IMG/VR virus record: IMGVR_UViG_3300042350_004191
Span: 124,001 to 188,000 of that record
Strand: one strand, 5' to 3'
Length of the DNA: 64,000 bases
The translations under genes were made by a program, and so were the position numbers. Positions 11,202 to 33,428 of this stretch are shown here, in pieces (position 1 is the stretch's first letter; each line of letters opens with the position of its first letter). The notes beneath the pieces were generated by a model. That model saw only the letters and a list, made by a program, of their open reading frames with translations, was not told the origin of the DNA and did not search any database.

Positions 11202-11977
11202 AAAAGAAAACTAAAGACAAAACCCCTAAGAAAAAAAATATAATAAAAAAAACTATTAAAAAAAACATTTCTAAAAGCAAAGAACTCAACGAAGTTAAAA
11301 CAAAACCTATAGTAAATAAAAAACCAAAAAAAAGAAGAAGAAAATTAGAAGAAAACATAGACGAACTTGCGGAATATGAAGATCATCTTCTCACAGAAGA
11401 AGATTTTGAACAAGAATTAGAATTAAGTTTAAAAAAACGTCTTGGATATAGCGAAGAAGATGAATTAGAAGAAACAGAAGAAGTAGAAGAACCCGAAGAA
11501 GTAGAGGAAGTAGAAATTTTAGGGGTTCCTTATAAAAACAAAAGACCAAAGGTTCCAAAAGAAAAATTTTATGTTGATCCCAAACATTTTGATGATGAAA
11601 TTGTGAAATATTATGAATCTGGTGTTATATCAAATGATTTAGCTGAAATGGTTAGTAAGATTGCCAACAAATTAAGCTTTTCATCAAATTTTGCGGGTTA
11701 TACGTATAGAGAAGAAATGGTGGGAGATGGTATTGTTCGTATGTTTAAAGCACTAATGTCAAAAAAATACGACAGAGAAAAAGGAACCAACCCATTTTCT
11801 TACTTTACAAGAATCGCCTTCAATGCTTTTAGAAATAGAATTAAAAAAGAAAAACACATTCACGAAGCACAAGAAAGATATCAACAAGAATATATGATGG
11901 TATCCGAAGGATATACTAATTTACTAAAAAATAACCAAATTAGTATAACAAAAGATTTATTAGATAGATATGATTGA
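11198..11977 (+). CDS. 55: Late-transcription sigma factor gp55 with long charged N-terminal extension
   Basis: FYVD...KIANKLS...NFAGYTYREEMVGDG...NPFSYFTRIAFNAFRNRIKKEK; precedes gp47 as in T4-like phages. Confidence 0.88.
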   Translation: MKKKTKDKTPKKKNIIKKTIKKNISKSKELNEVKTKPIVNKKPKKRRRKLEENIDELAEYEDHLLTEEDFEQELELSLKKRLGYSEEDELEETEEVEEPEEVEEVEILGVPYKNKRPKVPKEKFYVDPKHFDDEIVKYYESGVISNDLAEMVSKIANKLSFSSNFAGYTYREEMVGDGIVRMFKALMSKKYDREKGTNPFSYFTRIAFNAFRNRIKKEKHIHEAQERYQQEYMMVSEGYTNLLKNNQISITKDLLDRYD

Positions 11978-13001
11978 TTGTGTTAATGCTAAAATAGGAA
12001 GTTTTTCTGATATTCATATAGGGTTATATCAAGATAACCCTATATGGCACGATATATCTTTAAAATTCGCAGAAAATGTATCAACCTTTTATAAAAAAGA
12101 AGGTATTAAAGACATAATCATACCTGGTGATATATTTCATAACAGATCAGAGATATCAGTAAGAACAATACATACTGCAAAACGTTTTTTTGACTATTTT
12201 AAAGATTTTAATATCATAATATCTGCTGGTAATCATGATTCTTTCTTAAAAGAAAAAGCAGAAATAAATTCTATATGTATATTTGATGGTTGGTCAAATA
12301 TAACTATTGTTGATAAACAACCCCATGTTATAGAAACATCTAACGGCACAACAATTTCGCTGGTACCATGGGGTACACCAGTAGAAAGCATCCCCCATAC
12401 CGATATATGTTTTGGTCATTTTGAAATTAATACGTTTTACATGAACACTTACAGAGCTTGTGAAAAGGGTGAAGACTCTACTAATTTATTAAGTAAAAGT
12501 CCGTTTATTATATCAGGCCATTTTCACAAAAAAGACCATAGAACGTATAAAAAAGGTCAAATTTTATACTTGGGAAGTCCATATCAACACAATTTTGGCG
12601 ATTATGGTGATGACAGAGGTTATTATATAATAAATTTGGATACTAAAACGTTTAATTATTATTCAAATACTTTTTCGCCTAAATTTATAAAAATTAACAA
12701 AGAAAATTTAGAAGAAAAAACAATTAAAAATGTTTTAGAAAATAATTTTGTACATTTATCTTTAGATTCGTCTGTTAAAAATGATGAAATTAATAAAATA
12801 ATAACTCAATTAAAAACATATAAACCGAATGATATAAAAATTGAATATCAAAACACAGAAGAAGAGAAAAACACAGAAAAAACTTACGATTCTATAGATA
12901 TATTAGAAAATATTTATGAATATGTTCAAACTTTAGATATTGAAAGCAAAAATGAAGTTGTTAATTATCTAACAGATGTGTATAATAGTATAAACAAATG
13001 A
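11970..13001 (+). CDS. 47: Recombination endonuclease subunit gp47 (Mre11/SbcD-like)
   Basis: SDIHIG, GDIFHNR, GNHD, GHFE, SGHFH, YLGSPY metallophosphoesterase motifs. Confidence 0.92.
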   Translation: MIDCVNAKIGSFSDIHIGLYQDNPIWHDISLKFAENVSTFYKKEGIKDIIIPGDIFHNRSEISVRTIHTAKRFFDYFKDFNIIISAGNHDSFLKEKAEINSICIFDGWSNITIVDKQPHVIETSNGTTISLVPWGTPVESIPHTDICFGHFEINTFYMNTYRACEKGEDSTNLLSKSPFIISGHFHKKDHRTYKKGQILYLGSPYQHNFGDYGDDRGYYIINLDTKTFNYYSNTFSPKFIKINKENLEEKTIKNVLENNFVHLSLDSSVKNDEINKIITQLKTYKPNDIKIEYQNTEEEKNTEKTYDSIDILENIYEYVQTLDIESKNEVVNYLTDVYNSINK

Positions 13002-13744
13002 AAACCGGAATTGGAATATTAGATCTATATGATGATGAAAGTCTTAAAGACCTTTTATCAAAGGTACCACAAGATGCTTATATATCAGTTATAAGCAATC
13101 GCAAAAATCCTTATAAACCAGAAGTAGACAATTATATAAGCGTAGGAGATTCGTCCTTGGCTAATATGAAAAATTTACTTTTATACGATTTTAGGATTAA
13201 AAATCTTGATTATTATTATTTAATACACACTGATCAAGTATTAAATGATGCCGATGATTTTAATAAAATTAAAAAGATTTCCGAAACTTTTGGAACATGG
13301 TTTTTAACTGGTAATATAGGAGATAAAACACTCGATATTGAAGATGATAATGGTTCAGTTTTAAAATTATCACAAAAATTAAACTCAAAATTTCTTTTTA
13401 CATTTAAAGGAATATTAAAAAATGTTGGATTCTTTGATGAAAGATTTATTAATACACAAAACTTAGATGTCTTGGATTATATTATTCGTTTAAAACAAAA
13501 AAACTTATATGTAGCAGATGGTTATTATCCAACAATTTCATTACCAATTGTTGAAAACAGAAAAACAATGAGCAATGCTTATATACAAGATTTTCCTAGT
13601 GAAGAAATGTCAGTAAGACATTCTTATGGGTTGTTTGTACATTTACACAAATACATTCCTAATCATAGTGATCCTCAACCTAAAAAAGAAGAAGAGGTTT
13701 TAAACTCTGTTGAAAATTTACAAAAAAATTATTCTAAAAAATAA
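12998..13744 (+). CDS. Divergent GT2-like glycosyltransferase
   Basis: KNVGFFDERF...LDYIIRL resembles the GT2 C-terminal motif of the next gene; DxD degenerate (HTD). Confidence 0.5.
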   Translation: MKTGIGILDLYDDESLKDLLSKVPQDAYISVISNRKNPYKPEVDNYISVGDSSLANMKNLLLYDFRIKNLDYYYLIHTDQVLNDADDFNKIKKISETFGTWFLTGNIGDKTLDIEDDNGSVLKLSQKLNSKFLFTFKGILKNVGFFDERFINTQNLDVLDYIIRLKQKNLYVADGYYPTISLPIVENRKTMSNAYIQDFPSEEMSVRHSYGLFVHLHKYIPNHSDPQPKKEEEVLNSVENLQKNYSKK

Positions 13745-13749
13745 ATTAT

Positions 13750-15186
13750 ATGATTTTCGTAGGTATAGTTACATGTAATCGACCAGATTATTTTAATAAA
13801 TGTTATGAGTCTGTTAAAAATGCTAATAACGTAGACGTTATTGCTGTATGTAATGACGGAAAAGACGAAGTTCTTTTAGACTCAAATTCTTTATACATAA
13901 AACATAAAGAAAATAAAGGTGTAGGTATTAGCAAAAATGATTTATTGAGGTTAGCATTGGAAAATCCTAAAATAGAACACATCTTTTTATTAGAAGATGA
14001 TATGATTGTCAAAGATCCTGATGTTTTTAATGTATATGTTAAAGCTGCTAAAAAATCAGGAATATATCATTTAAATTTTGGACCAGGATCTCCTTTTAAT
14101 AGAAAACAAAACTTTAATTTTGATTTACATAATAGACATTTGTGTAAAAATGATTCAGAATTAAATCCTAAGTTAAAAGTAGAGTATAGCGAAGACGTAG
14201 AAGTTTGGTTTTATGAGCATACGGTTGCTATGCTGTCTTATTTTCACAGGTCTGTATTAGAGGATGTAGGATTACACGATGAAAGGTTTTATAATGCATG
14301 GGAACATGTAGACTTAACATACAGAATAATAAAAGCAGGATATCATCCTCCTTTTTGGTGGTTTGCTGATGTTGCTAATAGCGATAAATTGATCGATGTT
14401 GCTCCTGAAGCTATAGAAAAAAGTTCAATTGCTAAAGATACCGAACAGTGGCAAAAAAATGTATATGGTGGTAGAGAAGTATATAAAGAAAAACATAATC
14501 ACTACCCAAACAACCCACCGTATCTTTCCAAAGAAGACGTTATACGTATAATTAAGCGTCTAAAAAGAAAGAGTGATCTTTTAGAAAAAGAAAAATCTAA
14601 TAATTTAACAGATAAGTTGCCAGATATATCTCAGATACCAGAAGAATTTGAAGAATTAATAAATGTTTATAAAACATTAAAACCTAAAAATGTATTAGAA
14701 ATTGGATCTTTGTTAGGTTGGTCTTTAAAAAGGTTTATTAAAAATGCAGAAGATAGTGCTAATATTATTTCTATCGATTATCCTGTAAGAGACTTTGTAG
14801 GACCCAATGATCAACGTGTTGACCAACAAGAGTATGGTCATATGATTCTTTGGAAAAAATGGGCTAAAGAAAAAAACATAAATTTGACAGTTTTACCTTA
14901 CTCGTCTTTTCAACAAAGCACACTTGAACAAGTAAAAAGTGTAACAAAAGAGTTAGATTTTCTTTTTATAGACGGAGATCATAGATATGAGGCAATAAAA
15001 AATGATTTTTATATGTATTATCCTTTAGTAAGGAAAGGAGGTATTATTGCTCTCCATGATATTGCAGAAAACGAAGAGGGTGGTGGTCATAAATTTTGGA
15101 ATGAGATAAAAAATAAATTTAAACACAAAGAATTTTTATTATCCGATAAAAAAGATAAAGGTATTGGAGTAGTATATGTCGAATAA
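13750..15186 (+). CDS. GT2 glycosyltransferase fused to class I SAM methyltransferase
   Basis: IVTCNRP, CNDG, LEDD, VGLHDERF...EHVDLTYR; C-terminal VLEIGS.LGWS, DFLFIDGDHRY, GGIIALHD. Confidence 0.85.
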   Translation: MIFVGIVTCNRPDYFNKCYESVKNANNVDVIAVCNDGKDEVLLDSNSLYIKHKENKGVGISKNDLLRLALENPKIEHIFLLEDDMIVKDPDVFNVYVKAAKKSGIYHLNFGPGSPFNRKQNFNFDLHNRHLCKNDSELNPKLKVEYSEDVEVWFYEHTVAMLSYFHRSVLEDVGLHDERFYNAWEHVDLTYRIIKAGYHPPFWWFADVANSDKLIDVAPEAIEKSSIAKDTEQWQKNVYGGREVYKEKHNHYPNNPPYLSKEDVIRIIKRLKRKSDLLEKEKSNNLTDKLPDISQIPEEFEELINVYKTLKPKNVLEIGSLLGWSLKRFIKNAEDSANIISIDYPVRDFVGPNDQRVDQQEYGHMILWKKWAKEKNINLTVLPYSSFQQSTLEQVKSVTKELDFLFIDGDHRYEAIKNDFYMYYPLVRKGGIIALHDIAENEEGGGHKFWNEIKNKFKHKEFLLSDKKDKGIGVVYVE

Positions 15187-16003
15187 TATAACATTTGTTA
15201 CACATTTAAGGTACGATAATCCAGACAGAATAAGCAATCTTCAAACAATGATTGATTATTACAGTCAAAATTTTCCAGAATCAAAATTTATTTTCGTGGA
15301 AGACGATTATGAACATAATAAAAATTTTGATAAAGTTAAATGGAAAAAAGGATCAACTTCTTATTATTTTTTAAAAAATACAGGGACATATCATAGAACC
15401 AAAGCATTAAATTATGGGTTTAATGAGGCAAAAACACCTATAGTTGTTTCCATGGATACTGATTGTATTGTTTCTAATAAATCTATATTAGAATGCGAAC
15501 AAGAATTGTTGAATGGTGCTACTGCCGCATGGCCTTATAATGGTTATTTTATCGATGTAGATTATAATCTAAAAAACTTCTTCACTCAAAATTCTTTAGA
15601 TTATAATATATTATTATCCAATCTTGATGGATGTTTAGAGTTGCCTATATGTGCATCTTACAAAAATTATTCTGTAAGGTGTACAAGTACAGTTCATTTA
15701 GGTGTAGGTGGAATTGTTATGTTCAACAAAGAACTATTTTTGAAAATAGGAGGTTACAATGAAAATTTTGTAGGTTGGGGCTGTGAAGATAATGAAGTAG
15801 AATATAGGTTAAAAACCTTGAATCAATTATATTATAGAGATAAAGATAAATCGTCTATATGTTTTCATTTATATCATGCACAAGCACAAAGGGCAGAGAA
15901 TCCATTCTATGATAGAAATGGTAAATTGTTAAACGAAATACAAGGAATGGATGAAGCTAATCTTTTGAAACATATATTAACTTGGAAAAATGATAACGTT
16001 TAG
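15176..16003 (+). CDS. GT-A glycosyltransferase (GT2 with GT7 C-terminal-like domain), putative galactosyltransferase
   Basis: RTKALNYG, MDTD (DxD), GGIVMF...IGGYNENFVGWGCEDNE...FHLYH. Confidence 0.82.
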   Translation: MSNNITFVTHLRYDNPDRISNLQTMIDYYSQNFPESKFIFVEDDYEHNKNFDKVKWKKGSTSYYFLKNTGTYHRTKALNYGFNEAKTPIVVSMDTDCIVSNKSILECEQELLNGATAAWPYNGYFIDVDYNLKNFFTQNSLDYNILLSNLDGCLELPICASYKNYSVRCTSTVHLGVGGIVMFNKELFLKIGGYNENFVGWGCEDNEVEYRLKTLNQLYYRDKDKSSICFHLYHAQAQRAENPFYDRNGKLLNEIQGMDEANLLKHILTWKNDNV

Positions 16004-16805
16004 AAATTTAGGAAAACATGGAGAATTCGGAAACCAGCTATTTCAAATAGCTGCTGTTATAGGTACTGCCATCAAAAACAATACAGTTTTTAATTTTCCG
16101 AAATGGCAAGGTTTAATATCTGGAACAGAGTATTCAACATATTTTAAAAATCCAATTCCAGAATCAGTAAACATTAATGACCATTTTGATGTTTATATGG
16201 AGCCATCTTTTTCGTATAACGAGATACCATATCAGATGAATCAAAAATTAGACTTGTTTGGTTATTTTCAAAGCGAAAAGTACTTCTTACACTGTAAAAA
16301 TGAAATTATAAATTTTTTCGAACCTTCAGAATTAATTTTTAAAAAAATAAAAAACTTAGATTATAAAAACTCTGTGAGTTTACAATTAAGGTTTTATGAT
16401 AATAAAAGACAATATTCAAATCACCTTGTTATGAACGATCCTTCGTATGGTGATTTATATTATACAGTTGAAGAGAATATTCCATATTTACAACAAGCTA
16501 TAAATTTTTTTGGGAAAGATAAAAATTATTTTGTAACTACAAATAACTTTGAAAAGGCTAAACAAATGTTTGGTGCTTATAGTAATTTTTATTTTTTGGA
16601 AAAATATTCATATTTAGAACAGTTTTTTATACAAAGTTTGTGCGAGCACAATATTATTACAAATTCGTCTTTTGGGTGGTGGGGTGCTTGGTTAAATAAA
16701 AATTTACATAAAATAGTTTTTGCGCCTTGCTTATGGTTTAAGCCAAATCATAAATCCAAAGAAGAAAGTAAAGATTTATATCCTGAAACTTGGAAAGTTT
16801 TATAA
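15990..16805 (+). CDS. GT11 alpha-1,2-fucosyltransferase-like protein
   Basis: GEFGNQLFQ, GYFQSEKYF, CEHNIITNSSFGWWGAWLN, DLYPETW; HxRRxD replaced by QLRFYD. Confidence 0.85.
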   Translation: MITFRNLGKHGEFGNQLFQIAAVIGTAIKNNTVFNFPKWQGLISGTEYSTYFKNPIPESVNINDHFDVYMEPSFSYNEIPYQMNQKLDLFGYFQSEKYFLHCKNEIINFFEPSELIFKKIKNLDYKNSVSLQLRFYDNKRQYSNHLVMNDPSYGDLYYTVEENIPYLQQAINFFGKDKNYFVTTNNFEKAKQMFGAYSNFYFLEKYSYLEQFFIQSLCEHNIITNSSFGWWGAWLNKNLHKIVFAPCLWFKPNHKSKEESKDLYPETWKVL

Positions 16806-17704
16806 TGAGAAGTTTAGTAACAGGTGGACAAGGATTTATTGGAAGCGTTTTAGTAAAAAAGCTACTAAACGAATGTAAAGATGATGTGATTGTTATTGAT
16901 AATAACAGTTCAAATAACAAAAATAATTTTAATGTTAAAGGAGCCAAATATTACAATGTAGATTTAAATAATTTTGACAAAATATTTCCTTTATTTAAAG
17001 ACGTTGACAGGGTATTTCATTTAGCAGCAGACGTTTCTATAGAGTTTTGTAATAAAAATCCCAGAATATCAGGTATTAATAACTCTAACATAACTCTTAA
17101 TACACTAGAATGTTGTCGATTAAATAAAGTTAAAAAATACATTTATTCGTCAACTTCTGCTGTATATGAACAAAAAAATACTAAATTGAAAGAAACCGAC
17201 AATGTTCGTCCTTTAAATTTATATTCAGCATCCAAATTATTTGGAGAAAATTTATGTAAAATATATTACGACCTTTATGGTGTAGAAACAATTTGTTTGC
17301 GCTATTTTAATGTTTTCGGTTCTTCAATGAAGAAAAGTCCATATTCTTCTGTTTTAGTTAATTTTTTAAATAATGAGTCAGAAAATAAACCATTAATTGT
17401 ACATGGTAATGGTAAACAAACAAGAGATTTTGTATTTGTTGAAGATGTAGCACAAGCAAACATCATAGCATCAACACTAAAATTGAAAAAATATGGTAAG
17501 ATTTACAATATAGGTTCTGGTAAAAGCATGTCTATAATAGACTTAGCAAAAAAAATTTCAAATAATATTACTTTTGTAAAATCACGAAGTGGTGATATAA
17601 AGAATAGTTGTTCTGATATTAAAAGATTAAAAAAAGACTTTAATTGGAAACCTGAAGTGAAAATTGAAAAATGGTTAAATAAAATAATTAAAACAAATGT
17701 ATAA
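16805..17704 (+). CDS. NAD-dependent nucleotide-sugar epimerase/dehydratase (extended SDR, GalE/WbpP-like)
   Basis: VTGGQGFIG, FHLAA, SSTSAVY, YSASK, LRYFNVFG, GNGKQTRDFVFVEDVA; TAATG coupling to GT11 gene. Confidence 0.9.
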   Translation: MRSLVTGGQGFIGSVLVKKLLNECKDDVIVIDNNSSNNKNNFNVKGAKYYNVDLNNFDKIFPLFKDVDRVFHLAADVSIEFCNKNPRISGINNSNITLNTLECCRLNKVKKYIYSSTSAVYEQKNTKLKETDNVRPLNLYSASKLFGENLCKIYYDLYGVETICLRYFNVFGSSMKKSPYSSVLVNFLNNESENKPLIVHGNGKQTRDFVFVEDVAQANIIASTLKLKKYGKIYNIGSGKSMSIIDLAKKISNNITFVKSRSGDIKNSCSDIKRLKKDFNWKPEVKIEKWLNKIIKTNV

Positions 17705-18380
17705 TATAGGTTTATTAATAATAGCGACAAATAAATACATAGATTTTTTAAATCCTTTAATAAAAAGTACAGATAATTATTTTTTAAAAAATCAAAATGT
17801 GAAATATTTTATCTTTACGGATAAAGATATTTCTTTTTTAAAAAGTGAAAGAGAAATTGTAAAAATTCAAACTGAACACAAAGACTGGCCTTGGATGACT
17901 TTAGGTAGATATAAAATTTTTTGTGATAGTAAAAATTTATTATCTAAAATGGATTATCTTTATTATTGTGATGTAGATATGAAATTTGTAGACGAGGTTG
18001 GTGACGAAATTTTAGAACAAATAGTAGCTACACAACATCCAGCTTTACGAGAAACAAGAGGAACTCCAGAAACTAACACAAGTTCTTTAGCGTGTGTTTA
18101 TCCTCACGAAAATATGGAATATTTTGCTGGTGGATTTAATGGCGGTTCTGCTGAACAATTTTTAAAAATGTCTAGTATTTTGTCTAAAAATATAGAAATC
18201 GATTATTTAAATGGAATTATTGCTTTGTGGCATGATGAAAGTCATTTAAATAGATATTTAATAGATAATCCTCCTACAAAAATATTAAGTCCAAGTTATT
18301 GTTACGGGGAAAACATGGAACTACCTTTCCCTAAAAAAATTCTAGCTTTAGACAAAAATCATTTTAAAATAAGATCATGA
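17697..18380 (+). CDS. GT6 alpha-1,3-glycosyltransferase (ABO-transferase family)
   Basis: IATNKY, YFIFTD, YCDVDMKF (DxD), YFAGGFNGG, ALWHDESHLNRYL, KILSPSY. Confidence 0.92.
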   Translation: MYNIGLLIIATNKYIDFLNPLIKSTDNYFLKNQNVKYFIFTDKDISFLKSEREIVKIQTEHKDWPWMTLGRYKIFCDSKNLLSKMDYLYYCDVDMKFVDEVGDEILEQIVATQHPALRETRGTPETNTSSLACVYPHENMEYFAGGFNGGSAEQFLKMSSILSKNIEIDYLNGIIALWHDESHLNRYLIDNPPTKILSPSYCYGENMELPFPKKILALDKNHFKIRS

Positions 18381-19039
18381 AAAAAGGAGTTATACTATAC
18401 CATAACAACATACAAAAATTGTATGATAATAGATGGATTGATAAATGTATACATTCCATGGTAAATCAAACGGATAATGATTTTACTTTTTATGAATTAA
18501 ATTATAACGGAGATTCTAATTCAGTTGTTAAAAACAATTCACAAAAATTAAAATTTTGGTCAAAAAAAATGTCAAATTATGCAGAAGCTATGAATTTTTT
18601 ATTGGATAAATCGTTTAATGATGGGTGTGATTATGTTTTTAATACAAACTTGGACGATTATTATGCATTAAACAGAATATCATCACAATTAGATATGATG
18701 TTAGAACAAGATTTAGATATAGTGAGTAGCGATTTTTCTTACATACAAGAAAGAAAAGAAAATGGTATTTCAGAAGATGTCGTAATTTTATTTAAAAATA
18801 TTGAAAAAAATAATATTAAAGACAATTTAATGAAAAGACATAATGTTATTGCTCATCCATCCGTTTGTTATAATAAAAGATTTTGGTTAGATAATAATAA
18901 CAGATATGATATTAATAAGGTTCCGCAAGAAGATCTAGACTTATGGATTCGCTCAATAAATAATGGTTATAAGTTTGGAATACATGAAAAAGTGTTATTG
19001 TATTATAGAATACATGAAAAACAAAGCAGTCAATCATGA
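18377..19039 (+). CDS. GT2-family glycosyltransferase
   Basis: CIHSMVNQT, NLDDY...RISSQL, IAHPSV, EDLDLWIR, LLYYRIH. Confidence 0.8.
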   Translation: MKKGVILYHNNIQKLYDNRWIDKCIHSMVNQTDNDFTFYELNYNGDSNSVVKNNSQKLKFWSKKMSNYAEAMNFLLDKSFNDGCDYVFNTNLDDYYALNRISSQLDMMLEQDLDIVSSDFSYIQERKENGISEDVVILFKNIEKNNIKDNLMKRHNVIAHPSVCYNKRFWLDNNNRYDINKVPQEDLDLWIRSINNGYKFGIHEKVLLYYRIHEKQSSQS

Positions 19040-19707
19040 ATATATACAATTTTATCGAAAGTAATATAAACAAAAATTCAATTTTTTTTGAAATAGGATC
19101 TCATTTTGGTTCGGATACTCAAAAATTTTCTAAAATAACAAACAAATTACATTGTTTTGAACCAGATCCTAGAAATATAAAAATTTTTAAACATTTGAAT
19201 TCAAATGTACAATTAAACGAGTTTGCAATTTCTGATAAAGACGGTGTATCACAATTTTTTCTTTCTAGTGGCAATGTGTACGAATCAATGTATGGACCTA
19301 CAGAAAATGAATTAATAAACCAAAACGATTGGTCAGCCTCTTCGTCATTAATTTCTCCTAAAAATCATTTTAAAAAAACACCATGGGTTAAATTTGATAA
19401 TACTATAGAAGTCAAAACAAAACGCCTAGATACATATTGTATAGAAAACGATATTAACAATATAGATTTTCTTTGGATGGACGTTCAAGGAGCAGAACTA
19501 AGCGTTATAAAAAGTATGGGAGCCTTCAAAGATAAAATACATTACATTTATACAGAATACAGCAATGAAGAATTGTATGAAAACCAAGGAACTAAAGAAC
19601 AAATTATAGAATTATTGGGCAATTCTTGGAAAGTTTTGTGTGATTTTGGAGGCGATATTTTATTAGAAAACCAAAATTATGATATCAATTACAATACCAG
19701 CATATGA
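19036..19707 (+). CDS. FkbM-family methyltransferase
   Basis: FEIGSHFG, FEPDPRN, AISD, TKRLD, IDFLWMDVQGAEL, IYTE. Confidence 0.88.
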   Translation: MNIYNFIESNINKNSIFFEIGSHFGSDTQKFSKITNKLHCFEPDPRNIKIFKHLNSNVQLNEFAISDKDGVSQFFLSSGNVYESMYGPTENELINQNDWSASSSLISPKNHFKKTPWVKFDNTIEVKTKRLDTYCIENDINNIDFLWMDVQGAELSVIKSMGAFKDKIHYIYTEYSNEELYENQGTKEQIIELLGNSWKVLCDFGGDILLENQNYDINYNTSI

Positions 19708-20350
19708 AATGTGTGGAGTTGGTAGTTCTTTTTTAGAAAAAAATTTACAATTTTTAAGAGATCAAACTTTTAAAAATTTTGAAGTAGTTATATCAGATCA
19801 TAGTATTTCCGATGATATAAAAAATGTTTGTTCTTTATTTAAAGACTTGGACATAAAATATATTAGAAATGAAAAAGATCGTGGAAGTTCTTCGGCTAAT
19901 TTAAACAATGCAATACTTAATTCAAAATATGATATTATTAAATTTTTAATGCAAGACGAATATATTTTTGAGAAAAATACTCTGTTGGATATTAAAAATG
20001 CTTTTCAAAGTGAAAATGTTAATTGGGTTGCTGTAGGTTTTTATAATGGAAATATAGAAGACAAAAGAATACCTTATTATAATGATGCAGTTATATATGG
20101 AAACAATACAATCGGAAGTCCTAGTATTGTTTCCATAAGAAAAACCAAAGATTTAGAGTTATTTAATCCTGAATTGATATGGTTAATGGATTGTGATTAT
20201 TATAAGAGAATTTACAATAAATGGGGTCATCCATTTATTGTAAAAGATTATAAAATTTTCATAAATCACCACCAAAATCAAGTTACTAATATTATAGATA
20301 ATATAAGAAAAGAAAAAGAACATGTTTTTTTAAAAACAATATATAAATAA
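19679..20350 (+). CDS. GT2-family glycosyltransferase
   Basis: ISITIPAYE, QTFKNFEVVISDHS, NLNNAI, FLMQDE, IGSPS, LMDCDYY. Confidence 0.85.
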   Translation: MISITIPAYEMCGVGSSFLEKNLQFLRDQTFKNFEVVISDHSISDDIKNVCSLFKDLDIKYIRNEKDRGSSSANLNNAILNSKYDIIKFLMQDEYIFEKNTLLDIKNAFQSENVNWVAVGFYNGNIEDKRIPYYNDAVIYGNNTIGSPSIVSIRKTKDLELFNPELIWLMDCDYYKRIYNKWGHPFIVKDYKIFINHHQNQVTNIIDNIRKEKEHVFLKTIYK

Positions 20351-20355
20351 GCGAT

Positions 20356-20952
20356 ATGACAAGAACACAGATAATAAACGGATTAATTAAAAAAAATAAC
20401 TATAAAAGTTATTTAGAGATCGGTGTTAATACACCTGAACAACCTGGATATAACTGGTCCAGTGTACAAATAGATTTAAAACACGGTGTTGATCCATTTG
20501 TAGACACGACATTTAAAACTACATCTGATGATTTTTTTAAAAATTACATAAATCAAAAATATGATATTATTTTTGTAGATGGGTTACATTTGTTTGAACA
20601 AGCATATAAAGATATAATAAATTCTTTAAATAATTTAAACGAAAATGGGACTATTGTAGTTCATGACTGTAATCCAATTACTGAAATAACACAACGAAGG
20701 ATCAGGGAATCGAATGAATGGCATGGTGATGTTTGGAAAGCTATTTTAAAGTTAAGATTAGAAAATCCCGATGTTGATATTTCCACAGTAAATGCTGATG
20801 AGGGGTGTGCTATCATTAAAAAAGGTCAACAAACACTATTAGAAGTATCGGAAAATATAGCTGAAGTCTATGATTATTCTTTTTTAGAAAAAAATAGAAA
20901 TAAAATATTAAATTTGATATCTACTGATGAATTTATAAAAAAATATCTTTAA
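20356..20952 (+). CDS. Class I SAM-dependent methyltransferase (Methyltransf_24-like)
   Basis: YLEIGV, GVDP, TSDDFF, YDIIFVDGLH, GTIVVHDCNP, WHGDVWK. Confidence 0.85.
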   Translation: MTRTQIINGLIKKNNYKSYLEIGVNTPEQPGYNWSSVQIDLKHGVDPFVDTTFKTTSDDFFKNYINQKYDIIFVDGLHLFEQAYKDIINSLNNLNENGTIVVHDCNPITEITQRRIRESNEWHGDVWKAILKLRLENPDVDISTVNADEGCAIIKKGQQTLLEVSENIAEVYDYSFLEKNRNKILNLISTDEFIKKYL

Positions 20953-20985
20953 TTTTTTAAAAAATCTGATATAATAATTTGTTTA

Positions 20986-22785
20986 ATGAAAAAAATTCAA
21001 TTTAAACACCTTTTTATACAAAATTTTTTATCTGTAGGTGAAGAAAAATTGCATATTAATTTTGATAGTGGTGTTAATTTCATAACAGGTATAAACAAGG
21101 ATAAAAACAGCAAAAATGGGTGCGGTAAAACTACTATTTTAGATGCTTTATATTGGTGTATATTTGGAAATACTATAAGAGACATTAAAAAAGATAAAAT
21201 TATTCATAATCACTCAGATGTTAGATGTAAAGTTGTATTAGAATTTGATCTTATTAATAATAATACCGAATCTTATAAAATAGAAAGAACTATTAATCCT
21301 AGTAAAGTCCATTTATACAAAAAACAAGAGGATACAACATATTCTACTATACAAAAAACAGATGAAGCTATTAAAAATTTATTAGGAGCTAATGAGGAAC
21401 TGTTTAGAAATTCTGTAATAATGTCATTGGATAATACCTTACCTTTCATGGCACAAAAAAAGGTAGAAAAAAGAAAATTTATTGAAGGAATTCTTCAGAT
21501 TAATATTTTTAGTGAAATGTTATCTAAAGTTAGACAGGATTATAACGAATCTAAAAAAACTCATGAAATAAATACAAATACATTTATTGAAAAACAAAAA
21601 ATGTTAAAATTTTTAGAAGATCAAAAAGAAAAAAACGAACAGAATAAAAAAGAAAAAATAAAATCCATCAATAATAAAATTAAAGAAAACATAGAAAAAA
21701 TAAAAAACAATAAAACGGAAAATTTTGATGAAAAATTAAAAAAATTTAAAGATTCTTTAACTAAAACTGAAAATATTGCAAGTAAAATAGATGAAAAAGT
21801 TGAAAACTCAAGAAATTCCATTTTAGAAGAAACAAAGAAAGAGTCTAAAATTCAAGCGGAGATTGAAAGTTTAGAAAAACAAATCAAATCTTTGCAAAAT
21901 AAAACAGGAACATGTCCCACTTGTAAAAGAAAATTAATTGAAGAAGATGATAATTCTATAAATTCACATATCGAGAAGATAAAGATCGATATTAAAGAAA
22001 AAGAACAACAACACAACTCGATTCTTTCAGTTAAAAACAAAATTAATCTAGAAAAAAATACTTTTATATCAAAAAAAGATGAATTAGTAAAAATTATTAA
22101 AGAAATTAATTTAAAAATTACAGCTTTACAGACTTTATCAAAAGAATCACAAACATTAAAAGACAGAAATGAAGAATTGTTGGTTGAAATAGAAAATATT
22201 AAAAATCAAAAAGACGAAATTAGCGAAAAATATGAAGAAATTAAAAAAGAAATATTAAACTTAGAGAAAAATATAGAAGAACAAATTAAAAATTTAACAA
22301 TTTTAGAAAATTGTAAGTCTATTGTTTCTGAAGAGGGTGTTAAAACTTATATAGTCAAAAAACTTCTGGTTTTATTTAATAATAAATTAAATTTATATCT
22401 TAAAAAGTTAGAAGCACCATGTAATTGTATTTTTGATGAGTACTTTGATGAAATTATAACTAATGAATCAGGGAAAGAGTGTTCGTACTTTAACTTTAGT
22501 GGTGGAGAAAGGAAAAGAATAGACTTAGCCATACTCTTCACATTTCAAGACATTTTAAAATCACAAACAGGAATACATTATTCACTCAGTATGTACGATG
22601 AACTATTTGATTCTGCATTAGATGATGCTGGTTCTGCTAAAGTGTTGGAAATTTTAAAAGAAAATACAGAAAAACATCAAGAATCTGTTTATATTATATC
22701 TCATAGTTCTTCCATCAATAAAAATGATGTTAATAAAGTTATTGAATTAGAAAAAATTAACGGCCAAACCAAGATAGTTAATTGA
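20986..22785 (+). CDS. 46: Recombination endonuclease subunit gp46 (Rad50/SbcC-like ATPase)
   Basis: NFLSVG, NGCGKTT, coiled coil with CPTC zinc hook, FSGGE, YDELFD, ISH. Confidence 0.93.
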   Translation: MKKIQFKHLFIQNFLSVGEEKLHINFDSGVNFITGINKDKNSKNGCGKTTILDALYWCIFGNTIRDIKKDKIIHNHSDVRCKVVLEFDLINNNTESYKIERTINPSKVHLYKKQEDTTYSTIQKTDEAIKNLLGANEELFRNSVIMSLDNTLPFMAQKKVEKRKFIEGILQINIFSEMLSKVRQDYNESKKTHEINTNTFIEKQKMLKFLEDQKEKNEQNKKEKIKSINNKIKENIEKIKNNKTENFDEKLKKFKDSLTKTENIASKIDEKVENSRNSILEETKKESKIQAEIESLEKQIKSLQNKTGTCPTCKRKLIEEDDNSINSHIEKIKIDIKEKEQQHNSILSVKNKINLEKNTFISKKDELVKIIKEINLKITALQTLSKESQTLKDRNEELLVEIENIKNQKDEISEKYEEIKKEILNLEKNIEEQIKNLTILENCKSIVSEEGVKTYIVKKLLVLFNNKLNLYLKKLEAPCNCIFDEYFDEIITNESGKECSYFNFSGGERKRIDLAILFTFQDILKSQTGIHYSLSMYDELFDSALDDAGSAKVLEILKENTEKHQESVYIISHSSSINKNDVNKVIELEKINGQTKIVN

Positions 22786-22820: not shown

Positions 22821-24125
22821 ATGGCTTTAAAAATTAAACAAAACACCGAACAAAACGACAGAAAAACCGTTTATGAATTTTCATGTGTTAGAAGAGCTAT
22901 CCCATTCCCACCACTAGGAACAACTACTAATTTACTGAATTTTAATTATATTGCCTTAAATGCAATAAAAATACCGCCACCACTACCAGTAGAAATGCCT
23001 GAAACCTCATTACCGAGAGTTTTAAATTATTATGCAGACTATGGTGGTTGTGGTTTTTGGCGAATGATATGGCCTGAATTTCTTTTAAATTTCTATCAGA
23101 AGATGGTTTGTACTGGAATGACACAAATGGTCTTAGATACCCGTTTTTATTCCACTATAAGGGCTATAAGGTTCCAAAGACAAGCTACAGATCATCAAAT
23201 GATGTTTATTAAAGAGCTTAATAAGGTTAAGAAAGACCTTAACCTAAGATTATTGTATGAAGTAGATGATGTAGTCTTCAAAGAAGATATTCCAGAATAT
23301 AATCGTTGTAGAGATGCATTTAATGATGATAAAATTGTCAAAAATATTTTAGAAATCATAGAAATGATGGATGAAATGACAGTAACTTGTCAATTCATGA
23401 AAGATTATTATATCGAAAAAACTGGAAATAAAAAAATTACAGTTATTCCAAATTATGCCCCCAAATTTTGGCTGGATAGATTTTATAATCCTGAAAAACT
23501 AGAAGAGAATTTTGAAAAAAACAAAAAACGCCCAAGAATATTATATTCTGGTTCTGGAACTCATATAGATGTTCTTAATAGAACGGGTATGAAAGATGAT
23601 TTTAGTCATGTAATTGACCAAATTATAAAAGCTAGAAAGAAATTTAAGTTTGTTTGGAAGGGTTGTTATCCATTAGCACTAAGACCCTTCATTGATAGCG
23701 GTGAAATGGAATATGTTGATTGGTCGCCTTTACCTGATTACCCTAAAGGTTTGATGGATACAAATTGCAATGCAACTTTTGCACCTTTAATTGATAATAT
23801 TTTCAATAAATCAAAAAGTAACATTAAAATGGTTGAATCTGGTGCATTAGGTATGCCCGGTGCATATCAAAATTTATGCACTTATGAAATGGCCGAACAC
23901 AGATTTGATAAAGGTACAGATTTAATTGAAAAACTTGAATACATTACCTCTGATGTCGATAGATATATGAAAGAATCACAAAAAGCACGAAAATTCGCAG
24001 AAGGTCTTTGGTTAGAAGATCATATAAACGAATATGAGGGTCTATATTTGACTGCATGGGGTTCAAAAGAACGTAATGAGAAATATCCGAGCTTGATTTC
24101 TCTCAATAAAGATCAGATAATATAG
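22821..24125 (+). CDS. GT-B fold glycosyltransferase
   Basis: ADYGGCGFWRMIWP, FQRQ, YEVDD, VIPNY, YSGSGTH, APLIDNIFNKSKSNIKMVESGALG. Confidence 0.75.
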   Translation: MALKIKQNTEQNDRKTVYEFSCVRRAIPFPPLGTTTNLLNFNYIALNAIKIPPPLPVEMPETSLPRVLNYYADYGGCGFWRMIWPEFLLNFYQKMVCTGMTQMVLDTRFYSTIRAIRFQRQATDHQMMFIKELNKVKKDLNLRLLYEVDDVVFKEDIPEYNRCRDAFNDDKIVKNILEIIEMMDEMTVTCQFMKDYYIEKTGNKKITVIPNYAPKFWLDRFYNPEKLEENFEKNKKRPRILYSGSGTHIDVLNRTGMKDDFSHVIDQIIKARKKFKFVWKGCYPLALRPFIDSGEMEYVDWSPLPDYPKGLMDTNCNATFAPLIDNIFNKSKSNIKMVESGALGMPGAYQNLCTYEMAEHRFDKGTDLIEKLEYITSDVDRYMKESQKARKFAEGLWLEDHINEYEGLYLTAWGSKERNEKYPSLISLNKDQII

Positions 24126-31717: not shown

Positions 31718-32605
31718 ATGAACAAATACTCAAACAACCTATTCGAATCCATCAAAGACGCACTCAATAAGAAAACAACTAACACAGAGAGCAGTTTTAA
31801 GGATTTTATGAAGACAGAAATGAACAAAACATATATTGTTCGTTTACTTCCAAATGTGGAATCTCCAGACAGAACATTTTTCCATTATTTTCATCATATG
31901 TGGAAAAGCGTATTAACAAATAATATGATTTCTTTTCTTTGTCCCACAACCTATGGGGAAAAATGTCCTCTCGAAGAATATAGAGGAAAGGCATATCGCA
32001 GTAAAAATGAAGCAGAGATTGAGAAAACAAGACCAATCAAAAGAAACGAATCTTGGCTTGCCAATGTTTATGTTATTAAAGATCCAACAAATCCTGAAAA
32101 TGAGGGTAAAGTAAAAATCCTCCGTTTCGGTAAGCAACTTAATAAAATTATCACTGATGCTATTTCCGGTGATGAAAGCGAAGAATTTGGTCCAAAAATC
32201 TTTGATTTATCTGAAAATGGTTGTAATTTTAAGATTAAAGTAGATTCAAATGAAGGCGGTTATCCAACATATGTTAGTTCAAAGTTTATGACACCTTCAA
32301 AACTCGAAGAGATCACTAATCCAGATGAAGTATATGCACAAGTTAAACAACTTGATAAAATCTTCACTCAAAAATCTTATGAAGAGATTAAAGAATTGTT
32401 GGATGTTCACTTCCTTGGCTTAGAGAAGGAAGAAAAGCCTTCTATTAATCAGCAGAAACCAGTCCATGAAGAAATTCCTGAAATTAATTCGATGGTTGAA
32501 GTAGAGTCTACTGATAACTCAAATAAATCAGAAGCCAAAGTAGATTCTATAGGAGATATTGATGATGCTGATGCAAAGATTGAAGAAATTCTTAAAGGTT
32601 TGTAA
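31718..32605 (+). CDS. 32: Single-stranded DNA-binding protein gp32
   Basis: VRLLP, CPTTYGEKCP, ANVYVIKDPTNPENEGKVKILRFGK, FDLSENGCNFKIK, YPTYVSSKF, acidic tail. Confidence 0.92.
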   Translation: MNKYSNNLFESIKDALNKKTTNTESSFKDFMKTEMNKTYIVRLLPNVESPDRTFFHYFHHMWKSVLTNNMISFLCPTTYGEKCPLEEYRGKAYRSKNEAEIEKTRPIKRNESWLANVYVIKDPTNPENEGKVKILRFGKQLNKIITDAISGDESEEFGPKIFDLSENGCNFKIKVDSNEGGYPTYVSSKFMTPSKLEEITNPDEVYAQVKQLDKIFTQKSYEEIKELLDVHFLGLEKEEKPSINQQKPVHEEIPEINSMVEVESTDNSNKSEAKVDSIGDIDDADAKIEEILKGL

Positions 32606-32609
32606 GAAT

Positions 32610-33428
32610 ATGCCTGTCAAAAAATCCAAAGAAGACATTCTTTATACTGAAAAGAACGTTTCGAAAAACACACCACATCTTATACAAATAGGATGTGGTG
32701 ATGTTCATATACCAATTTCTGTTTTAAGAAAAGACGGTTCTACTAATTTTTCACAGGCTATTGTTAATGTGATGGTAGATTTGAATCCATCAGTAAATGG
32801 ATCTAATATTTCAAAAATTTTAAAGATCCTTAATAAGGACGATCATTATACATTCGAAACATTAATTGATTCTTTATTAAGAAACATCGATGAATTTAAA
32901 ATTTATGATAAACAAATCAAAATCAATCTTGATTTTATGTATTTCTTAAGAAAGAAAGCATTAGTTTCTAAAAAAGAGTCTTGGGTTGGATTTAAAACTA
33001 CATTCACAGTCCAAAAAATAGAGGAAAACATCAATTATTTTCTTAAAGTATACGTTCCATATGCATCTGTGTGTCCTACATCTAAAGAAATATCTGATTA
33101 TGGAGCACACAATCAAAGATCATTAGCTGAAATTGAAGTTCAATTAACTAACTTGGATGATAAAAAAGAATTTTGGGTCGAGGATATTGTATATTTGATA
33201 GATCATTGTGTATCTTGTCCTGTTTTTAATGTCATTGAACTTGAGGATGAAGCGTTCCAAACAGAGATGATGTATGAAAACCCAATGTTTGTCGAGGAAG
33301 TTGCAACAAAAATAGCAAAAAGCCTAGATAAACACAAAGACAAACACATTAAAAGCTATAATTTTGTCTTAAATCATTATGAAAGCATAAATGATTATAC
33401 GGTAAAGGCTATTTTACAAAACAATTAA
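32610..33428 (+). CDS. folE2: Divergent FolE2 (GTP cyclohydrolase IB)-like T-fold protein
   Basis: YFLRKKALVS, SVCPTSKEISDYGAHNQRS, WVEDIV, YENPMFVEE, HYESI; several conserved residues substituted. Confidence 0.8.
   Translation: MPVKKSKEDILYTEKNVSKNTPHLIQIGCGDVHIPISVLRKDGSTNFSQAIVNVMVDLNPSVNGSNISKILKILNKDDHYTFETLIDSLLRNIDEFKIYDKQIKINLDFMYFLRKKALVSKKESWVGFKTTFTVQKIEENINYFLKVYVPYASVCPTSKEISDYGAHNQRSLAEIEVQLTNLDDKKEFWVEDIVYLIDHCVSCPVFNVIELEDEAFQTEMMYENPMFVEEVATKIAKSLDKHKDKHIKSYNFVLNHYESINDYTVKAILQNN

What the first reader, a model, noticed from the sequence alone, without database searches (positions are those of the whole stretch)
17697..18380. GT6 with metal-type DxD motif and A-transferase-like AGG specificity triad
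Seen: CDVD and YFAGGFNGG. Known: vertebrate GT6 enzymes use DxD with Mn2+, while most bacterial GT6 use NxN and are metal-independent. Human GTA has LGG and GTB has MGA at residues 266-268, and small residues there admit GalNAc. Inference: a metal-dependent, anchorless UDP-GalNAc transferase closer in mechanism to the vertebrate type.
Basis: partly seen in the sequence, partly recalled or inferred. Interest (0 to 1): 0.7.

Follow-up and report, generated by a model that had tools for sequence, protein, structure and literature searches.

The report
Phage blood-group-A-type glycosyltransferase (GT6)
This is an intact gene for a small, soluble relative of the human blood-group A enzyme, carried in a sugar-building gene island of an uncultured freshwater T4-like phage; it belongs to a phage and bacterial branch of the family that was described more than ten years ago, so it is a new member, not a new kind.

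Summary
Window 17697-18380 (+) is a 227-aa ORF that matches Pfam Glyco_transf_6 (E 5e-42). Against human GTA, its DVD aligns with D211-V212-D213 and its AGG with residues 266-268. The catalytic WHDESHLN block, H233, T245, A343, K346 and R352 are all kept. The predicted structure (pLDDT 96) superposes on GTA/GTB and on Bacteroides BoGT6a at TM 0.92-0.95.

The inferred function, a metal-dependent, anchorless GalNAc transferase acting on a fucosylated galactose, is well supported by homology but was not tested. The combination is not unusual. P-SSM2 cyanophage GT6 has the same DVD and AGG. All 159 nearest viral and bacterial relatives have DxD, and 143 of them have AGG. Thiyagarajan et al. 2012 already defined this "minimal, DXD" clade and showed that its Parachlamydia member needs Mg2+/Mn2+ and transfers GalNAc to H antigen. 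By overall sequence the clade is nearer to BoGT6a than to GTA.

The context is new. The host genome is a 210-kb lake-water T4-like phage. The gene sits in a 7.2-kb island of soluble enzymes between gp47 and gp46, which is a variable hotspot in this lineage. The island also holds a β4GalT-like enzyme, a GT11, a 4-epimerase, GT2s and methyltransferases. The GT6 is under purifying selection (dN/dS 0.08).

Verdict: a new member of a known kind, of modest interest.

The parts
17697..18380 (+). GT6 glycosyltransferase, 227 aa, minimal catalytic domain. Key residues: DVD at 92-94, AGG at 144-146, WHDE at 178-181, K220, R226.
   Evidence: Pfam PF03414 E 5e-42. Alignment to GTA. AlphaFold model pLDDT 96.4, TM 0.92-0.95 to GTA/GTB/BoGT6a. 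dN/dS 0.08 against sister phage L255.
16790..17704 (+). GalE-like SDR nucleotide-sugar 4-epimerase, inferred to supply UDP-GalNAc or UDP-Gal. The true start is probably the ATG at 16805.
   Evidence: Pfam Epimerase E 1e-50. NCBIfam GalE at 150 bits, below the 262-bit cut-off. PDB hits are UDP-hexose and UDP-HexNAc 4-epimerases: 6dnt, 4zrm, WbpP, WbgU. The sister phage's gene call has 299 aa.
15990..16805 (+). GT11-like enzyme (α1,2-fucosyltransferase family), inferred maker of the Fucα1-2Gal acceptor. Its motif I reads QLRFYD where the consensus is HxRRGD.
   Evidence: Pfam PF01531 at 36.5 bits against a 23.9-bit cut-off. It is the only GT11 in the genome. GT11 lies within 8 kb of GT6 in 65/80 viral and 34/80 bacterial relatives' loci. 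Motif comparison.
15176..16003 (+). GT2/GT7-like transferase whose C-terminal region resembles β1,4-galactosyltransferase. Candidate donor of the galactose that is then fucosylated.
   Evidence: Pfam Glyco_transf_7C E 1e-12. The weak best PDB hits are β4GalT1, E ~9e-5. It travels with GT11 in most islands at this hotspot.
13750..15186 (+). Fusion of a GT2-like N-terminal domain with a C-terminal methyltransferase of the CmcI / rhamnosyl O-methyltransferase type. First gene of the island.
   Evidence: Pfam Methyltransf_24 E 4e-13 and weak Glycos_transf_2. Present in nearly all islands at the hotspot.
18377..20952 (+). Distal part of the island: GT2-like (18377-19039), FkbM methyltransferase (19036-19707), GT2 (19679-20350), Methyltransf_24 (20356-20952).
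   Evidence: Pfam hits. The genes overlap or lie no more than 5 nt apart, and none has a hydrophobic segment.
11970..13001 (+). gp47-like (Mre11/SbcD) nuclease. Left border of the island hotspot. It is followed by a conserved 248-aa ORF (12998-13744) of unknown function.
   Evidence: Weak NCBIfam SbcD/Mre11 hits. Synteny uvsW-gp55-gp47 in relatives.
20986..22785 (+). gp46-like (Rad50/SbcC) ATPase. Right border of the island hotspot.
   Evidence: Pfam AAA_23, SMC_N and Rad50 zinc hook. Adjacent to gp47 (0-7 nt) in about 25 related phage contigs.

Best explanation
The ORF encodes a soluble, retaining α1,3-glycosyltransferase of CAZy family GT6. It belongs to the already described 'minimal catalytic domain + DXD' clade typified by cyanophage P-SSM2 GT6 and Parachlamydia PaGT6.

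Inferred mechanism:
- A divalent cation (Mg2+ or Mn2+) held by D92/D94 bridges the UDP diphosphate.
- The C-terminal K220 and R226 close over the donor.
- E181 (the E303 equivalent) is the catalytic residue.
- The small A144-G145-G146 pocket admits the N-acetyl group, so the donor is most likely UDP-GalNAc.
- His114, Ala116 and Ala217 (the A1, A2 and A7 positions) leave room for a 2'-fucose, so the acceptor is most likely Fucα1-2Gal-R. The product would be a blood-group-A-like terminal trisaccharide.

The enzyme acts as a late step in a phage-encoded cytoplasmic pathway: β4GalT-like transferase, then GT11, then GT6. A GalE-like epimerase supplies the donor, and further GT2s and sugar O-methyltransferases sit in the same island. 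The island lies in a variable hotspot between gp47 and gp46 of an uncultured freshwater T4-like myovirus.

Shown here: family membership, fold, residue equivalences, gene context, conservation and purifying selection. Inferred: metal dependence, donor, acceptor and order of steps. Unknown: the molecule that carries the glycan (host surface polysaccharide or LPS, or a phage or host protein) and the host.
For: Family and fold.

Residue equivalences to GTA.

Literature:
- Clade definition, and the PaGT6 assay showing GalNAc transfer to H antigen or FAL, inactivity without metal, and inactivity on LacNAc: PMC3516806.
- AGGL is critical for the UDP-GalNAc specificity of BoGT6a, and the A1/A2/A7 acceptor determinants.
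- The DXD-metal link, and the C-terminal Arg conserved in metal-dependent GT6: PMC3961637.

Clade-wide conservation:
- DxD 120/120 and AGG 119/120 in close homologues; DxD 148/152 in 50%-identity cluster representatives.
- DxD 159/159, AGG 143/159 and Ala343 150/159 in the nearest loci; P-SSM2 has DVD + AGG.
- All Parachlamydiaceae-labelled relatives have DAD + AGG.

Phylogeny: the query lies in a supported set (SH-aLRT 96-97) that is almost entirely viral.

Context:
- GT11 within 8 kb in 51/60 fully flanked viral loci, epimerase in 48/60.
- The P-SSM2 island has GT11 + GT6 + epimerases.
- In hotspot variants, GT11 + GT7C is the common core and GT6 an add-on.

Functionality: dN/dS 0.08, similar to gp46 (0.07) and gp47 (0.05).

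Solubility: no hydrophobic segment in any island ORF.
Against: - No biochemical test was done.
- D326 of GTA, which by my recollection of the GTA/GTB structures is a fucose-contacting residue, is Gly here and Pro in most of the wider clade. Acceptor recognition may therefore differ in detail.
- The GT11-like partner has QLRFYD in place of the HxRRGD donor motif. Its activity, or its use of GDP-fucose, is uncertain.
- No gmd or fcl for GDP-fucose was found in the phage.
- The epimerase is below the GalE equivalog cut-off. Its substrate is not established.
- An AGG-type pocket could also accept UDP-Gal, giving dual specificity.
- In the only other lineage with the same long island (L179), the GT6 has lost its catalytic segment. 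The step is therefore dispensable.
Confidence: 0.62

Rival explanations
1. Same enzyme family and same metal dependence, but the donor is UDP-Gal or both sugars. The product would be a B-like or α-Gal-like terminus, and the neighbouring epimerase would act as a UDP-Glc/UDP-Gal 4-epimerase.
For: The epimerase's best named model is GalE (UDP-glucose 4-epimerase), though below cut-off. Residue 235 is Ala, between the Gly of GTA and the Ser of GTB. Donor specificity in GT6 is known to switch with one or two substitutions, as in the cis-AB mutants listed.
Against: Every tested enzyme with small residues at 266 and 268 is a GalNAc transferase: GTA with LGG, BoGT6a with AGG, and the α3GT AGGL mutant. 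The tested clade member PaGT6 uses UDP-GalNAc. Gal-specific enzymes carry bulkier residues: MGA in GTB and HAA in α3GT.
Confidence: 0.15
2. The enzyme adds α-GalNAc or α-Gal to an acceptor that is not an H-type Fucα1-2Gal, for example a methylated or otherwise modified galactoside made by the other island enzymes, or directly to a protein.
For: D326 is replaced by Gly or Pro in this clade. The GT11 partner has a degenerate HxRRGD motif. No GDP-fucose genes are present in the phage. The island is rich in methyltransferases. 15/80 viral and 46/80 bacterial loci show no GT11 within 8 kb.
Against: His233, small residue 235 and Ala343, the three positions that separate fucosylated-acceptor enzymes from α3GT, all match the GTA/BoGT6a state and are conserved in 150-159 of 159 relatives. 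GT11 is strongly linked to GT6 in phage loci. PaGT6 is inactive on LacNAc.
Confidence: 0.15
3. The gene is a decaying or non-functional passenger in a hypervariable island.
For: The L179 homologue carries an in-frame 26-aa deletion that removes the catalytic Glu. The island content varies among relatives.
Against: The ORF is intact and all catalytic and substrate-binding residues are kept. dN/dS is 0.08 against a sister phage at dS 0.47. The model has pLDDT 96. The identical gene occurs in independent lake metagenome runs.
Confidence: 0.03

Closest known systems
Prochlorococcus phage P-SSM2 GT6 (PSSM2_268) and its 'LPS / cell-wall modification' island
   Same: Phage-encoded minimal GT6 of about 230 aa. 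It has DVD, AGG, H233, A343, K346 and R352 and is 47% identical to the query. It lies in an island with GT11, nucleotide-sugar epimerases and GT2s in a T4-like myovirus.
   Different: P-SSM2 is a marine cyanophage with psbA and hli genes, and its island carries its own GDP-mannose dehydratase. This phage comes from lake water, has no psbA and shares only about 30% identity with any cultured phage in DNA polymerase. Its island sits between gp47 and gp46 and carries several methyltransferases. Residue 235 is Tyr in P-SSM2 and Ala here.
Parachlamydia acanthamoebae PaGT6 (clade 1 of Thiyagarajan et al. 2012, PMC3516806)
   Same: Same clade: minimal domain and DXD. Parachlamydiaceae relatives are about 50-53% identical to the query and carry DAD + AGG. 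It is the only clade member that has been assayed. [quoted passage not shown]
   Different: It is a bacterial chromosomal gene of an amoeba endosymbiont, not a phage gene. Its motifs are inferred from family members.
Bacteroides ovatus BoGT6a (PDB 4AYJ, 4CJ8)
   Same: Best structural and profile match: TM 0.93-0.95, rmsd 1.5 Å, and 239.7 bits to the clade profile. Same AGG donor triad and the same acceptor residues. It is an A-antigen synthase.
   Different: BoGT6a has NAN in place of DxD and is metal-independent. It has a C-terminal membrane-binding extension. The Arg equivalent to R352 is not conserved in that clade.
Human GTA (ABO A-transferase, EC 2.4.1.40)
   Same: DVD metal site, small 266/268 residues, the E303 block, K346/R352, and the H233, T245 and A343 acceptor residues. 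TM 0.92.
   Different: Only 32-33% identical. GTA is a type II membrane protein with a stem region and has the 176-195 loop. It has Leu266 (Ala here) and D326 (Gly here).

Membership tests
CAZy GT6 / Pfam PF03414 | Sequence match above the curated family threshold | tested here: met
   144 bits against a 25-bit cut-off, E 5e-42, covering profile positions 76-310 of 313.
CAZy GT6 / Pfam PF03414 | GT-A fold superposable on solved GT6 structures | tested here: met
   AlphaFold model pLDDT 96.4. Foldseek TMq 0.92-0.95 to GTA, GTB and BoGT6a.
CAZy GT6 / Pfam PF03414 | Invariant catalytic Glu (E303 in GTA, E192 in BoGT6a) in the W-H-D-E block | tested here: met
   WHDESHLN is identical to GTA. The Glu is invariant in 159/159 relatives.
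CAZy GT6 / Pfam PF03414 | Retaining α1,3 transfer of Gal or GalNAc | not testable with these tools
   Needs an enzyme assay and linkage analysis.
Clade 1 GT6 (minimal domain + DXD; P-SSM2, marine metagenome, PaGT6; PMC3516806) | Catalytic domain only: no N-terminal anchor or stem, and no C-terminal BHB membrane domain | tested here: met
   227 aa. Residue 3 aligns with GTA residue 115, and the last residue lies one past the R352 equivalent. The maximum 19-residue hydropathy is 1.26.
Clade 1 GT6 (minimal domain + DXD; P-SSM2, marine metagenome, PaGT6; PMC3516806) | D-X-D at the metal site | tested here: met
   D92-V-D94 aligns with D211-V-D213.
Clade 1 GT6 (minimal domain + DXD; P-SSM2, marine metagenome, PaGT6; PMC3516806) | Groups with P-SSM2 and Parachlamydia-type sequences, not with NXN or vertebrate enzymes | tested here: inconclusive
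   47% identity to P-SSM2 and 50-55% to Chlamydiota and Dependentiae genes, against 32-34% to GTA and BoGT6a. In the tree the query sits in a viral subclade among DXD sequences. No vertebrate sequence could be placed in the tree, and only one NXN row (gut phage L173) was in it, so the three-clade topology itself was not re-tested.
Clade 1 GT6 (minimal domain + DXD; P-SSM2, marine metagenome, PaGT6; PMC3516806) | Divalent-metal dependence | not testable with these tools
   Inferred from DXD, the conserved R352 equivalent and the PaGT6 assay.
A-type transferase (UDP-GalNAc:Fucα1-2Gal α1,3-GalNAc-T, EC 2.4.1.40-like) | Small residues at 266 and 268 that admit the N-acetyl group | tested here: met
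   A-G-G aligns with L266-G267-G268. This is the same triad as the AGG of BoGT6a.
A-type transferase (UDP-GalNAc:Fucα1-2Gal α1,3-GalNAc-T, EC 2.4.1.40-like) | Acceptor-site residues that accommodate 2'-fucose: His at A1, a small residue at A2, a small residue at A7 | tested here: met
   H114, A116 and A217 align with H233, G235 and A343. D326 is not conserved (Gly).
A-type transferase (UDP-GalNAc:Fucα1-2Gal α1,3-GalNAc-T, EC 2.4.1.40-like) | Measured preference for UDP-GalNAc and for an H-type acceptor | not testable with these tools
   Requires an assay.

The most novel reading that the evidence does not exclude
An uncultured freshwater T4-like phage carries, as a swappable cassette between gp47 and gp46, the full three-step logic that vertebrates use for the A antigen: β-Gal transferase, then α1,2-Fuc transferase, then metal-dependent α1,3-GalNAc transferase, plus donor epimerase and sugar methyltransferases. 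All of these are soluble. The phage would use the cassette to put a histo-blood-group-A-like, partly methylated glycan directly on a protein, such as its own virion or a host surface protein. This would differ from feeding a Wzx/Wzy-type LPS pathway. GT6 would be the lineage-specific terminal 'cap' that changes the epitope.
Probability: 0.2. Interest if true: 0.55.

Novelty: new member of a known kind. Interest (0 to 1): 0.27.

Why it matters
The motifs themselves add little. DXD-type, minimal, phage-borne GT6 enzymes with an AGG donor pocket have been known since P-SSM2, and one clade member has been assayed.

This locus adds four things:
1. Evidence that the clade is very large: more than 2,400 homologues at 90% clustering, about 450 viral contigs and about 440 bacterial species. 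It is dominated by phages and by protist-associated bacteria (Chlamydiota, Dependentiae). The textbook statement that prokaryotic GT6 are NXN and metal-independent therefore reflects sampling of gut and pathogen isolates.
2. A clean natural experiment: within one phage lineage the gp47|gp46 junction is empty, or carries a GT11 + β4GalT-like core, or carries that core plus GT6.
3. A compact, soluble candidate A-antigen synthase for enzymatic glycan synthesis.
4. If the glycan target were found, it would bear on how aquatic phages remodel host or virion surfaces.

Tried and rejected
- Near-identity DNA search of the island against GenBank phages found no match. The phage has no cultured close relative.
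- tRNA scan of the window found none.
- PDB sequence searches gave no hit for the GT11 ORF and nothing meaningful for the 434-aa conserved GT-like ORF.
- The DNA-glycosylation idea was considered because the island lies among replication and recombination genes. I rejected it as unlikely because the genome has no thymidylate-synthase / dCMP-hydroxymethylase family gene.
- The cyanophage idea is not supported, since there is no psbA.
- σ70-type promoter and terminator scans, and the T4 late-promoter motif TATAAATA, showed no enrichment over shuffles. Expression timing could not be inferred.
- The papers by Tumbale & Brew 2009 and Brew et al. 2010 are not held in the library.
I re-ran it without that row.
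- A phylogeny including vertebrate GT6 was not built. No tool returned vertebrate sequences under an id, and I did not type them in. Bit-score and profile comparisons to PDB chains were used instead.
Full report
**1. What is in the sequence**

Window 17697-18380 (+) is a 227-aa ATG-initiated ORF.
- It matches Pfam Glyco_transf_6 at E 5e-42, 144 bits against a 25-bit cut-off.
- It matches NCBIfam 'family 6 glucosyltransferase' at E 1e-57, at 195 bits, below that model's 250-bit cut-off.
- It matches solved human GTA/GTB (E ~4e-37) and Bacteroides ovatus BoGT6a (E 6e-37).

The HMMER alignment to PDB 1WSZ/1LZ0 can be converted to GTA numbering by adding 62 to the chain index. As a check, DVDM then falls on 211-214. 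On that numbering:
- Query D92-V-D94 equals D211-V212-D213.
- A144-G-G146 equals L266-G267-G268.
- A116 equals G235.
- H114 equals H233 and T123 equals T245.
- W178-H-D-E-S-H-L-N is identical to W300...N307.
- A217 equals A343, K220 equals K346 and R226 equals R352.
- D326 is Gly in the query, and R176 lies in a gap.

The AlphaFold model built on 36 homologues has mean pLDDT 96.4. It superposes on GTA/GTB at TMq 0.92-0.93 and on the closed BoGT6a-UDP-GalNAc complex at TMq 0.95, rmsd 1.5 Å.

**2. Anchorless**

The protein starts at the first β-strand of the catalytic domain (residue 3 aligns with GTA 115). It ends one residue after the R352 equivalent. No 19-residue window exceeds hydropathy 1.26. 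It has no vertebrate stem or transmembrane region and no C-terminal membrane-binding domain like that of the NXN bacterial enzymes.

**3. How unusual the motif combination is**

It is not unusual.
- Among the 120 closest homologues at 90% clustering (63-92% identity), DxD occurs in 120/120 and AGG in 119/120.
- Among the 150 best representatives of 50%-identity clusters, out of 2,556 clusters at E ≤ 1e-3, DxD occurs in 148/152 domains and NxN in 2. The triads are AGG 69, CGG 34, AGA 10 and GGG 8.
- Among the 80 best loci from GTDB genomes and the 80 best from IMG/VR, DxD occurs in 159/159, AGG in 143/159, Ala343 in 150/159 and Glu303 in 159/159.
- P-SSM2 GT6 has DVD, AGG, H233, A343, K346 and R352, the same states as the query except at residues 235 and 245.
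- Synechococcus phages S-CAM9 and ACG-2014f have DAD + QGC. A human-gut phage contig has NAN + CGG.

These samples are the neighbourhood of a DXD query, so they are not an unbiased census of all GT6.

**4. What is already known**

Thiyagarajan et al. [quoted passage not shown] - (3) bacterial enzymes with a C-terminal membrane-binding domain and N-X-N.

They expressed PaGT6. [quoted passage not shown] It is inactive without metal, with Mg2+ better than Mn2+, and inactive on LacNAc.

The same paper reports that A155-G-G-L158 is critical for the UDP-GalNAc specificity of BoGT6a, and that an α3GT variant with AGGL gains GalNAc-transferase activity. It also identifies three positions that separate fucosylated-acceptor enzymes from α3GT: A1 (His against Gln), A2 (Gly/Ser against Trp) and A7 (Ala/Ile against Trp). 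The query has His, Ala and Ala at these positions.

Pham et al. 2014 (PMC3961637) tie DXD to metal dependence. They note that the C-terminal Arg (α3GT R365, GTA R352) is conserved in metal-dependent GT6 but not in the bacterial NXN enzymes. The query keeps it.

All Parachlamydiaceae-labelled relatives found here carry DAD + AGG.

**5. 'Closer to the vertebrate type'?**

This holds only at the metal site and the C-terminal Arg. The single sequence scores GTA and BoGT6a equally, at 131.5 and 130.9 bits. A profile of the clade scores BoGT6a 239.7, GTA 200.7, GTB 196.9 and α3GT 164 bits. The best structural superposition is with BoGT6a.

**6. The genome and the island**

The window is bases 124001-188000 of a 210,586-bp IMG/VR virus record that CheckV rates 99% complete.

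It is a T4-like myovirus:
- The window holds UvsY, UvsW, gp55, gp47-like, gp46-like, gp43 polymerase, UvsX, gp41 helicase, gp32, large terminase, tail sheath and PhoH.
- It is only about 30-34% identical to any cultured phage in polymerase or terminase.
- It has no psbA.
- Its DNA is held almost completely by four lake-water metagenome runs.
- GC content is about 24-37% across the window.
- The host is unknown.

The GT6 lies in a 7.2-kb run of nine genes on one strand that overlap or lie no more than 5 nt apart. In order, with Pfam, NCBIfam and PDB evidence:
- a GT2-methyltransferase fusion (13750);
- a GT2/β4GalT-like transferase (15176; Glyco_transf_7C, best PDB hits β4GalT1);
- a GT11 (15990);
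- a GalE-like 4-epimerase (16790, probably starting at 16805);
- the GT6 (17697);
- a GT2-like protein (18377);
- an FkbM methyltransferase (19036);
- a GT2 (19679);
- a Methyltransf_24 (20356).

None of these proteins has a membrane segment. There is no flippase, polymerase, ligase or priming phosphoglycosyltransferase. The genome has one GT6, one GT11 and one strong SDR epimerase, and no evident GDP-fucose genes.

**7. The island is a cassette in a hotspot**

Relatives of this phage, found through gp46 at 36-64% identity, share the order uvsW-gp55-gp47-[x]-gp46-GT434-gp43.
- In about 25 contigs, gp47 and gp46 are 0-7 nt apart.
- In about 20 contigs, x is an island of 3.2-9.6 kb. It usually holds the GT2-MT fusion + GT11 + the β4GalT-like gene.
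- The extended version with epimerase, GT6, GT2, FkbM, GT2 and MT24 occurs only in the window, its twin contig (L175/L088, 100% identical) and L179.
- A sister phage recovered from Logan assemblies (L255; GT6 92% identical) also has the extended version, but with its last methyltransferase (MT24) replaced by a different methyltransferase.

GT6 is thus an add-on to a GT11 + β-GalT-like core. That fits a terminal step acting on a fucosylated galactose.

In L179 the island is collinear, at 62-75% identity per gene. Its GT6, however, has an in-frame 26-aa deletion that removes WHDESHLN...SPSYCY, including the catalytic Glu. The cap is therefore dispensable.

Between the window and L255, GT6 has dN/dS 0.08 at dS 0.47. 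This is like gp46 (0.07) and gp47 (0.05). The gene is maintained by selection here.

**8. Linkage to GT11 elsewhere**

A GT11 homologue lies within 8 kb of the GT6 gene in 65/80 viral loci, or 51/60 with full flanks. It is nearly always on the same strand, at a median gap of 1.3 kb. The same holds in 34/80 bacterial loci. An SDR epimerase is present in 60/80 viral loci. GT11 is otherwise rare, with 0 of 14 control genomes.

P-SSM2 shows the same trio, and so do unrelated phage-like contigs next to a ClpB-like gene.

One caveat: in this lineage GT11 motif I reads QLRFYD, where the family consensus is HxRRGD. The rest of the family signature is intact, and its dN/dS is 0.084.

**9. Phylogenetic place**

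I built an IQ-TREE (quick, LG+G4) tree of 165 GT6 domains. The query falls in a set of 24-25 rows with SH-aLRT 96-97. The set consists of 21-22 IMG/VR viral contigs, the 635-kb 'huge phage' LR745206 and one 31-kb contig binned as Flavobacterium.

Bacterial relatives at 44-55% identity are mostly Chlamydiota, Dependentiae/Babeliales, Verrucomicrobiota and unclassified MAGs. No vertebrate sequence could be added, so the root and the HGT direction proposed in the literature were not tested.

**10. Conclusion**

The ORF is a functional, soluble member of the DXD-type minimal GT6 clade. It is most likely a Mg2+/Mn2+-dependent UDP-GalNAc:Fucα1-2Gal α1,3-N-acetylgalactosaminyltransferase that caps a glycan built by the neighbouring phage enzymes.

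The carrier of that glycan is unknown. The literature on P-SSM2-type islands suggests host surface polysaccharide. A protein target such as the virion is also possible, which would fit an island made only of soluble enzymes.

The finding is a new member of a known kind.

Noticed in passing
window 13001-20986 (junction of gp47-like 11970-13001 and gp46-like 20986-22785); loci L175-L254: The gp47|gp46 junction is an insertion hotspot in this uncultured T4-like lineage. About 25 related contigs have the two genes 0-7 nt apart. About 20 carry glycan islands of 3.2-9.6 kb with varying gene content.
   Followed up: partly
L179:5491-6093: In the only other lineage with the same long island, the GT6 has an in-frame 26-aa deletion. 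It removes the WHDESHLN...SPSYCY segment, including the catalytic Glu. All neighbouring genes are intact.
   Followed up: partly
window 22821-24125 (+): A 434-aa ORF (phrog_7162 'glycosyltransferase', with no Pfam, NCBIfam or PDB match) is conserved between gp46 and gp43 in every relative examined. It is under very strong constraint (dN/dS 0.026). Its function is unknown.
   Followed up: partly
window 15990-16805 (+): The GT11-like protein keeps the family's N- and C-terminal motifs but has QLRFYD where 110 relatives mostly have HxRRGD. Its donor binding may be altered.
   Followed up: partly
window 32559-33428 (+): A type I GTP cyclohydrolase FolE2 (E 2e-50) lies directly after gp32. It is followed by four small ORFs with no Pfam hits. 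This could be a 7-deazaguanine or folate-related module.
   Followed up: no
loci L008-L087 (GTDB genomes): Bacterial carriers of the DXD-type minimal GT6 are concentrated in protist-associated lineages (Parachlamydiaceae, Simkaniaceae, Rhabdochlamydiaceae, Dependentiae/Babeliales). Verrucomicrobiota, some Pseudomonadota MAGs, a Woesearchaeota MAG and Moorena also carry it.
   Followed up: partly
L255:10661-11287 (-) versus window 20356-20952 (+): A sister phage (GT6 92% identical) has the island's last methyltransferase replaced by an unrelated methyltransferase on the opposite strand. This is gene-level swapping inside the cassette.
   Followed up: no
proteins P0121 (1191 aa) and P0127 (1263 aa): Some metagenomic proteins carry two complete GT6 domains within a much longer polypeptide. 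Many others fuse one GT6 domain to 200-800 extra residues.
   Followed up: no
window 3-5384 (+): A very long ORF (at least 1,793 aa, open at the window start) has a phage tail-collar domain near its C-terminus. It is probably a tail fibre.
   Followed up: no
window 16790-16805: The epimerase ORF as listed starts at TTG 16790. The sister phage's gene call starts at the ATG equivalent to 16805 (299 aa), directly after the GT11 stop. That is the more likely start.
   Followed up: partly
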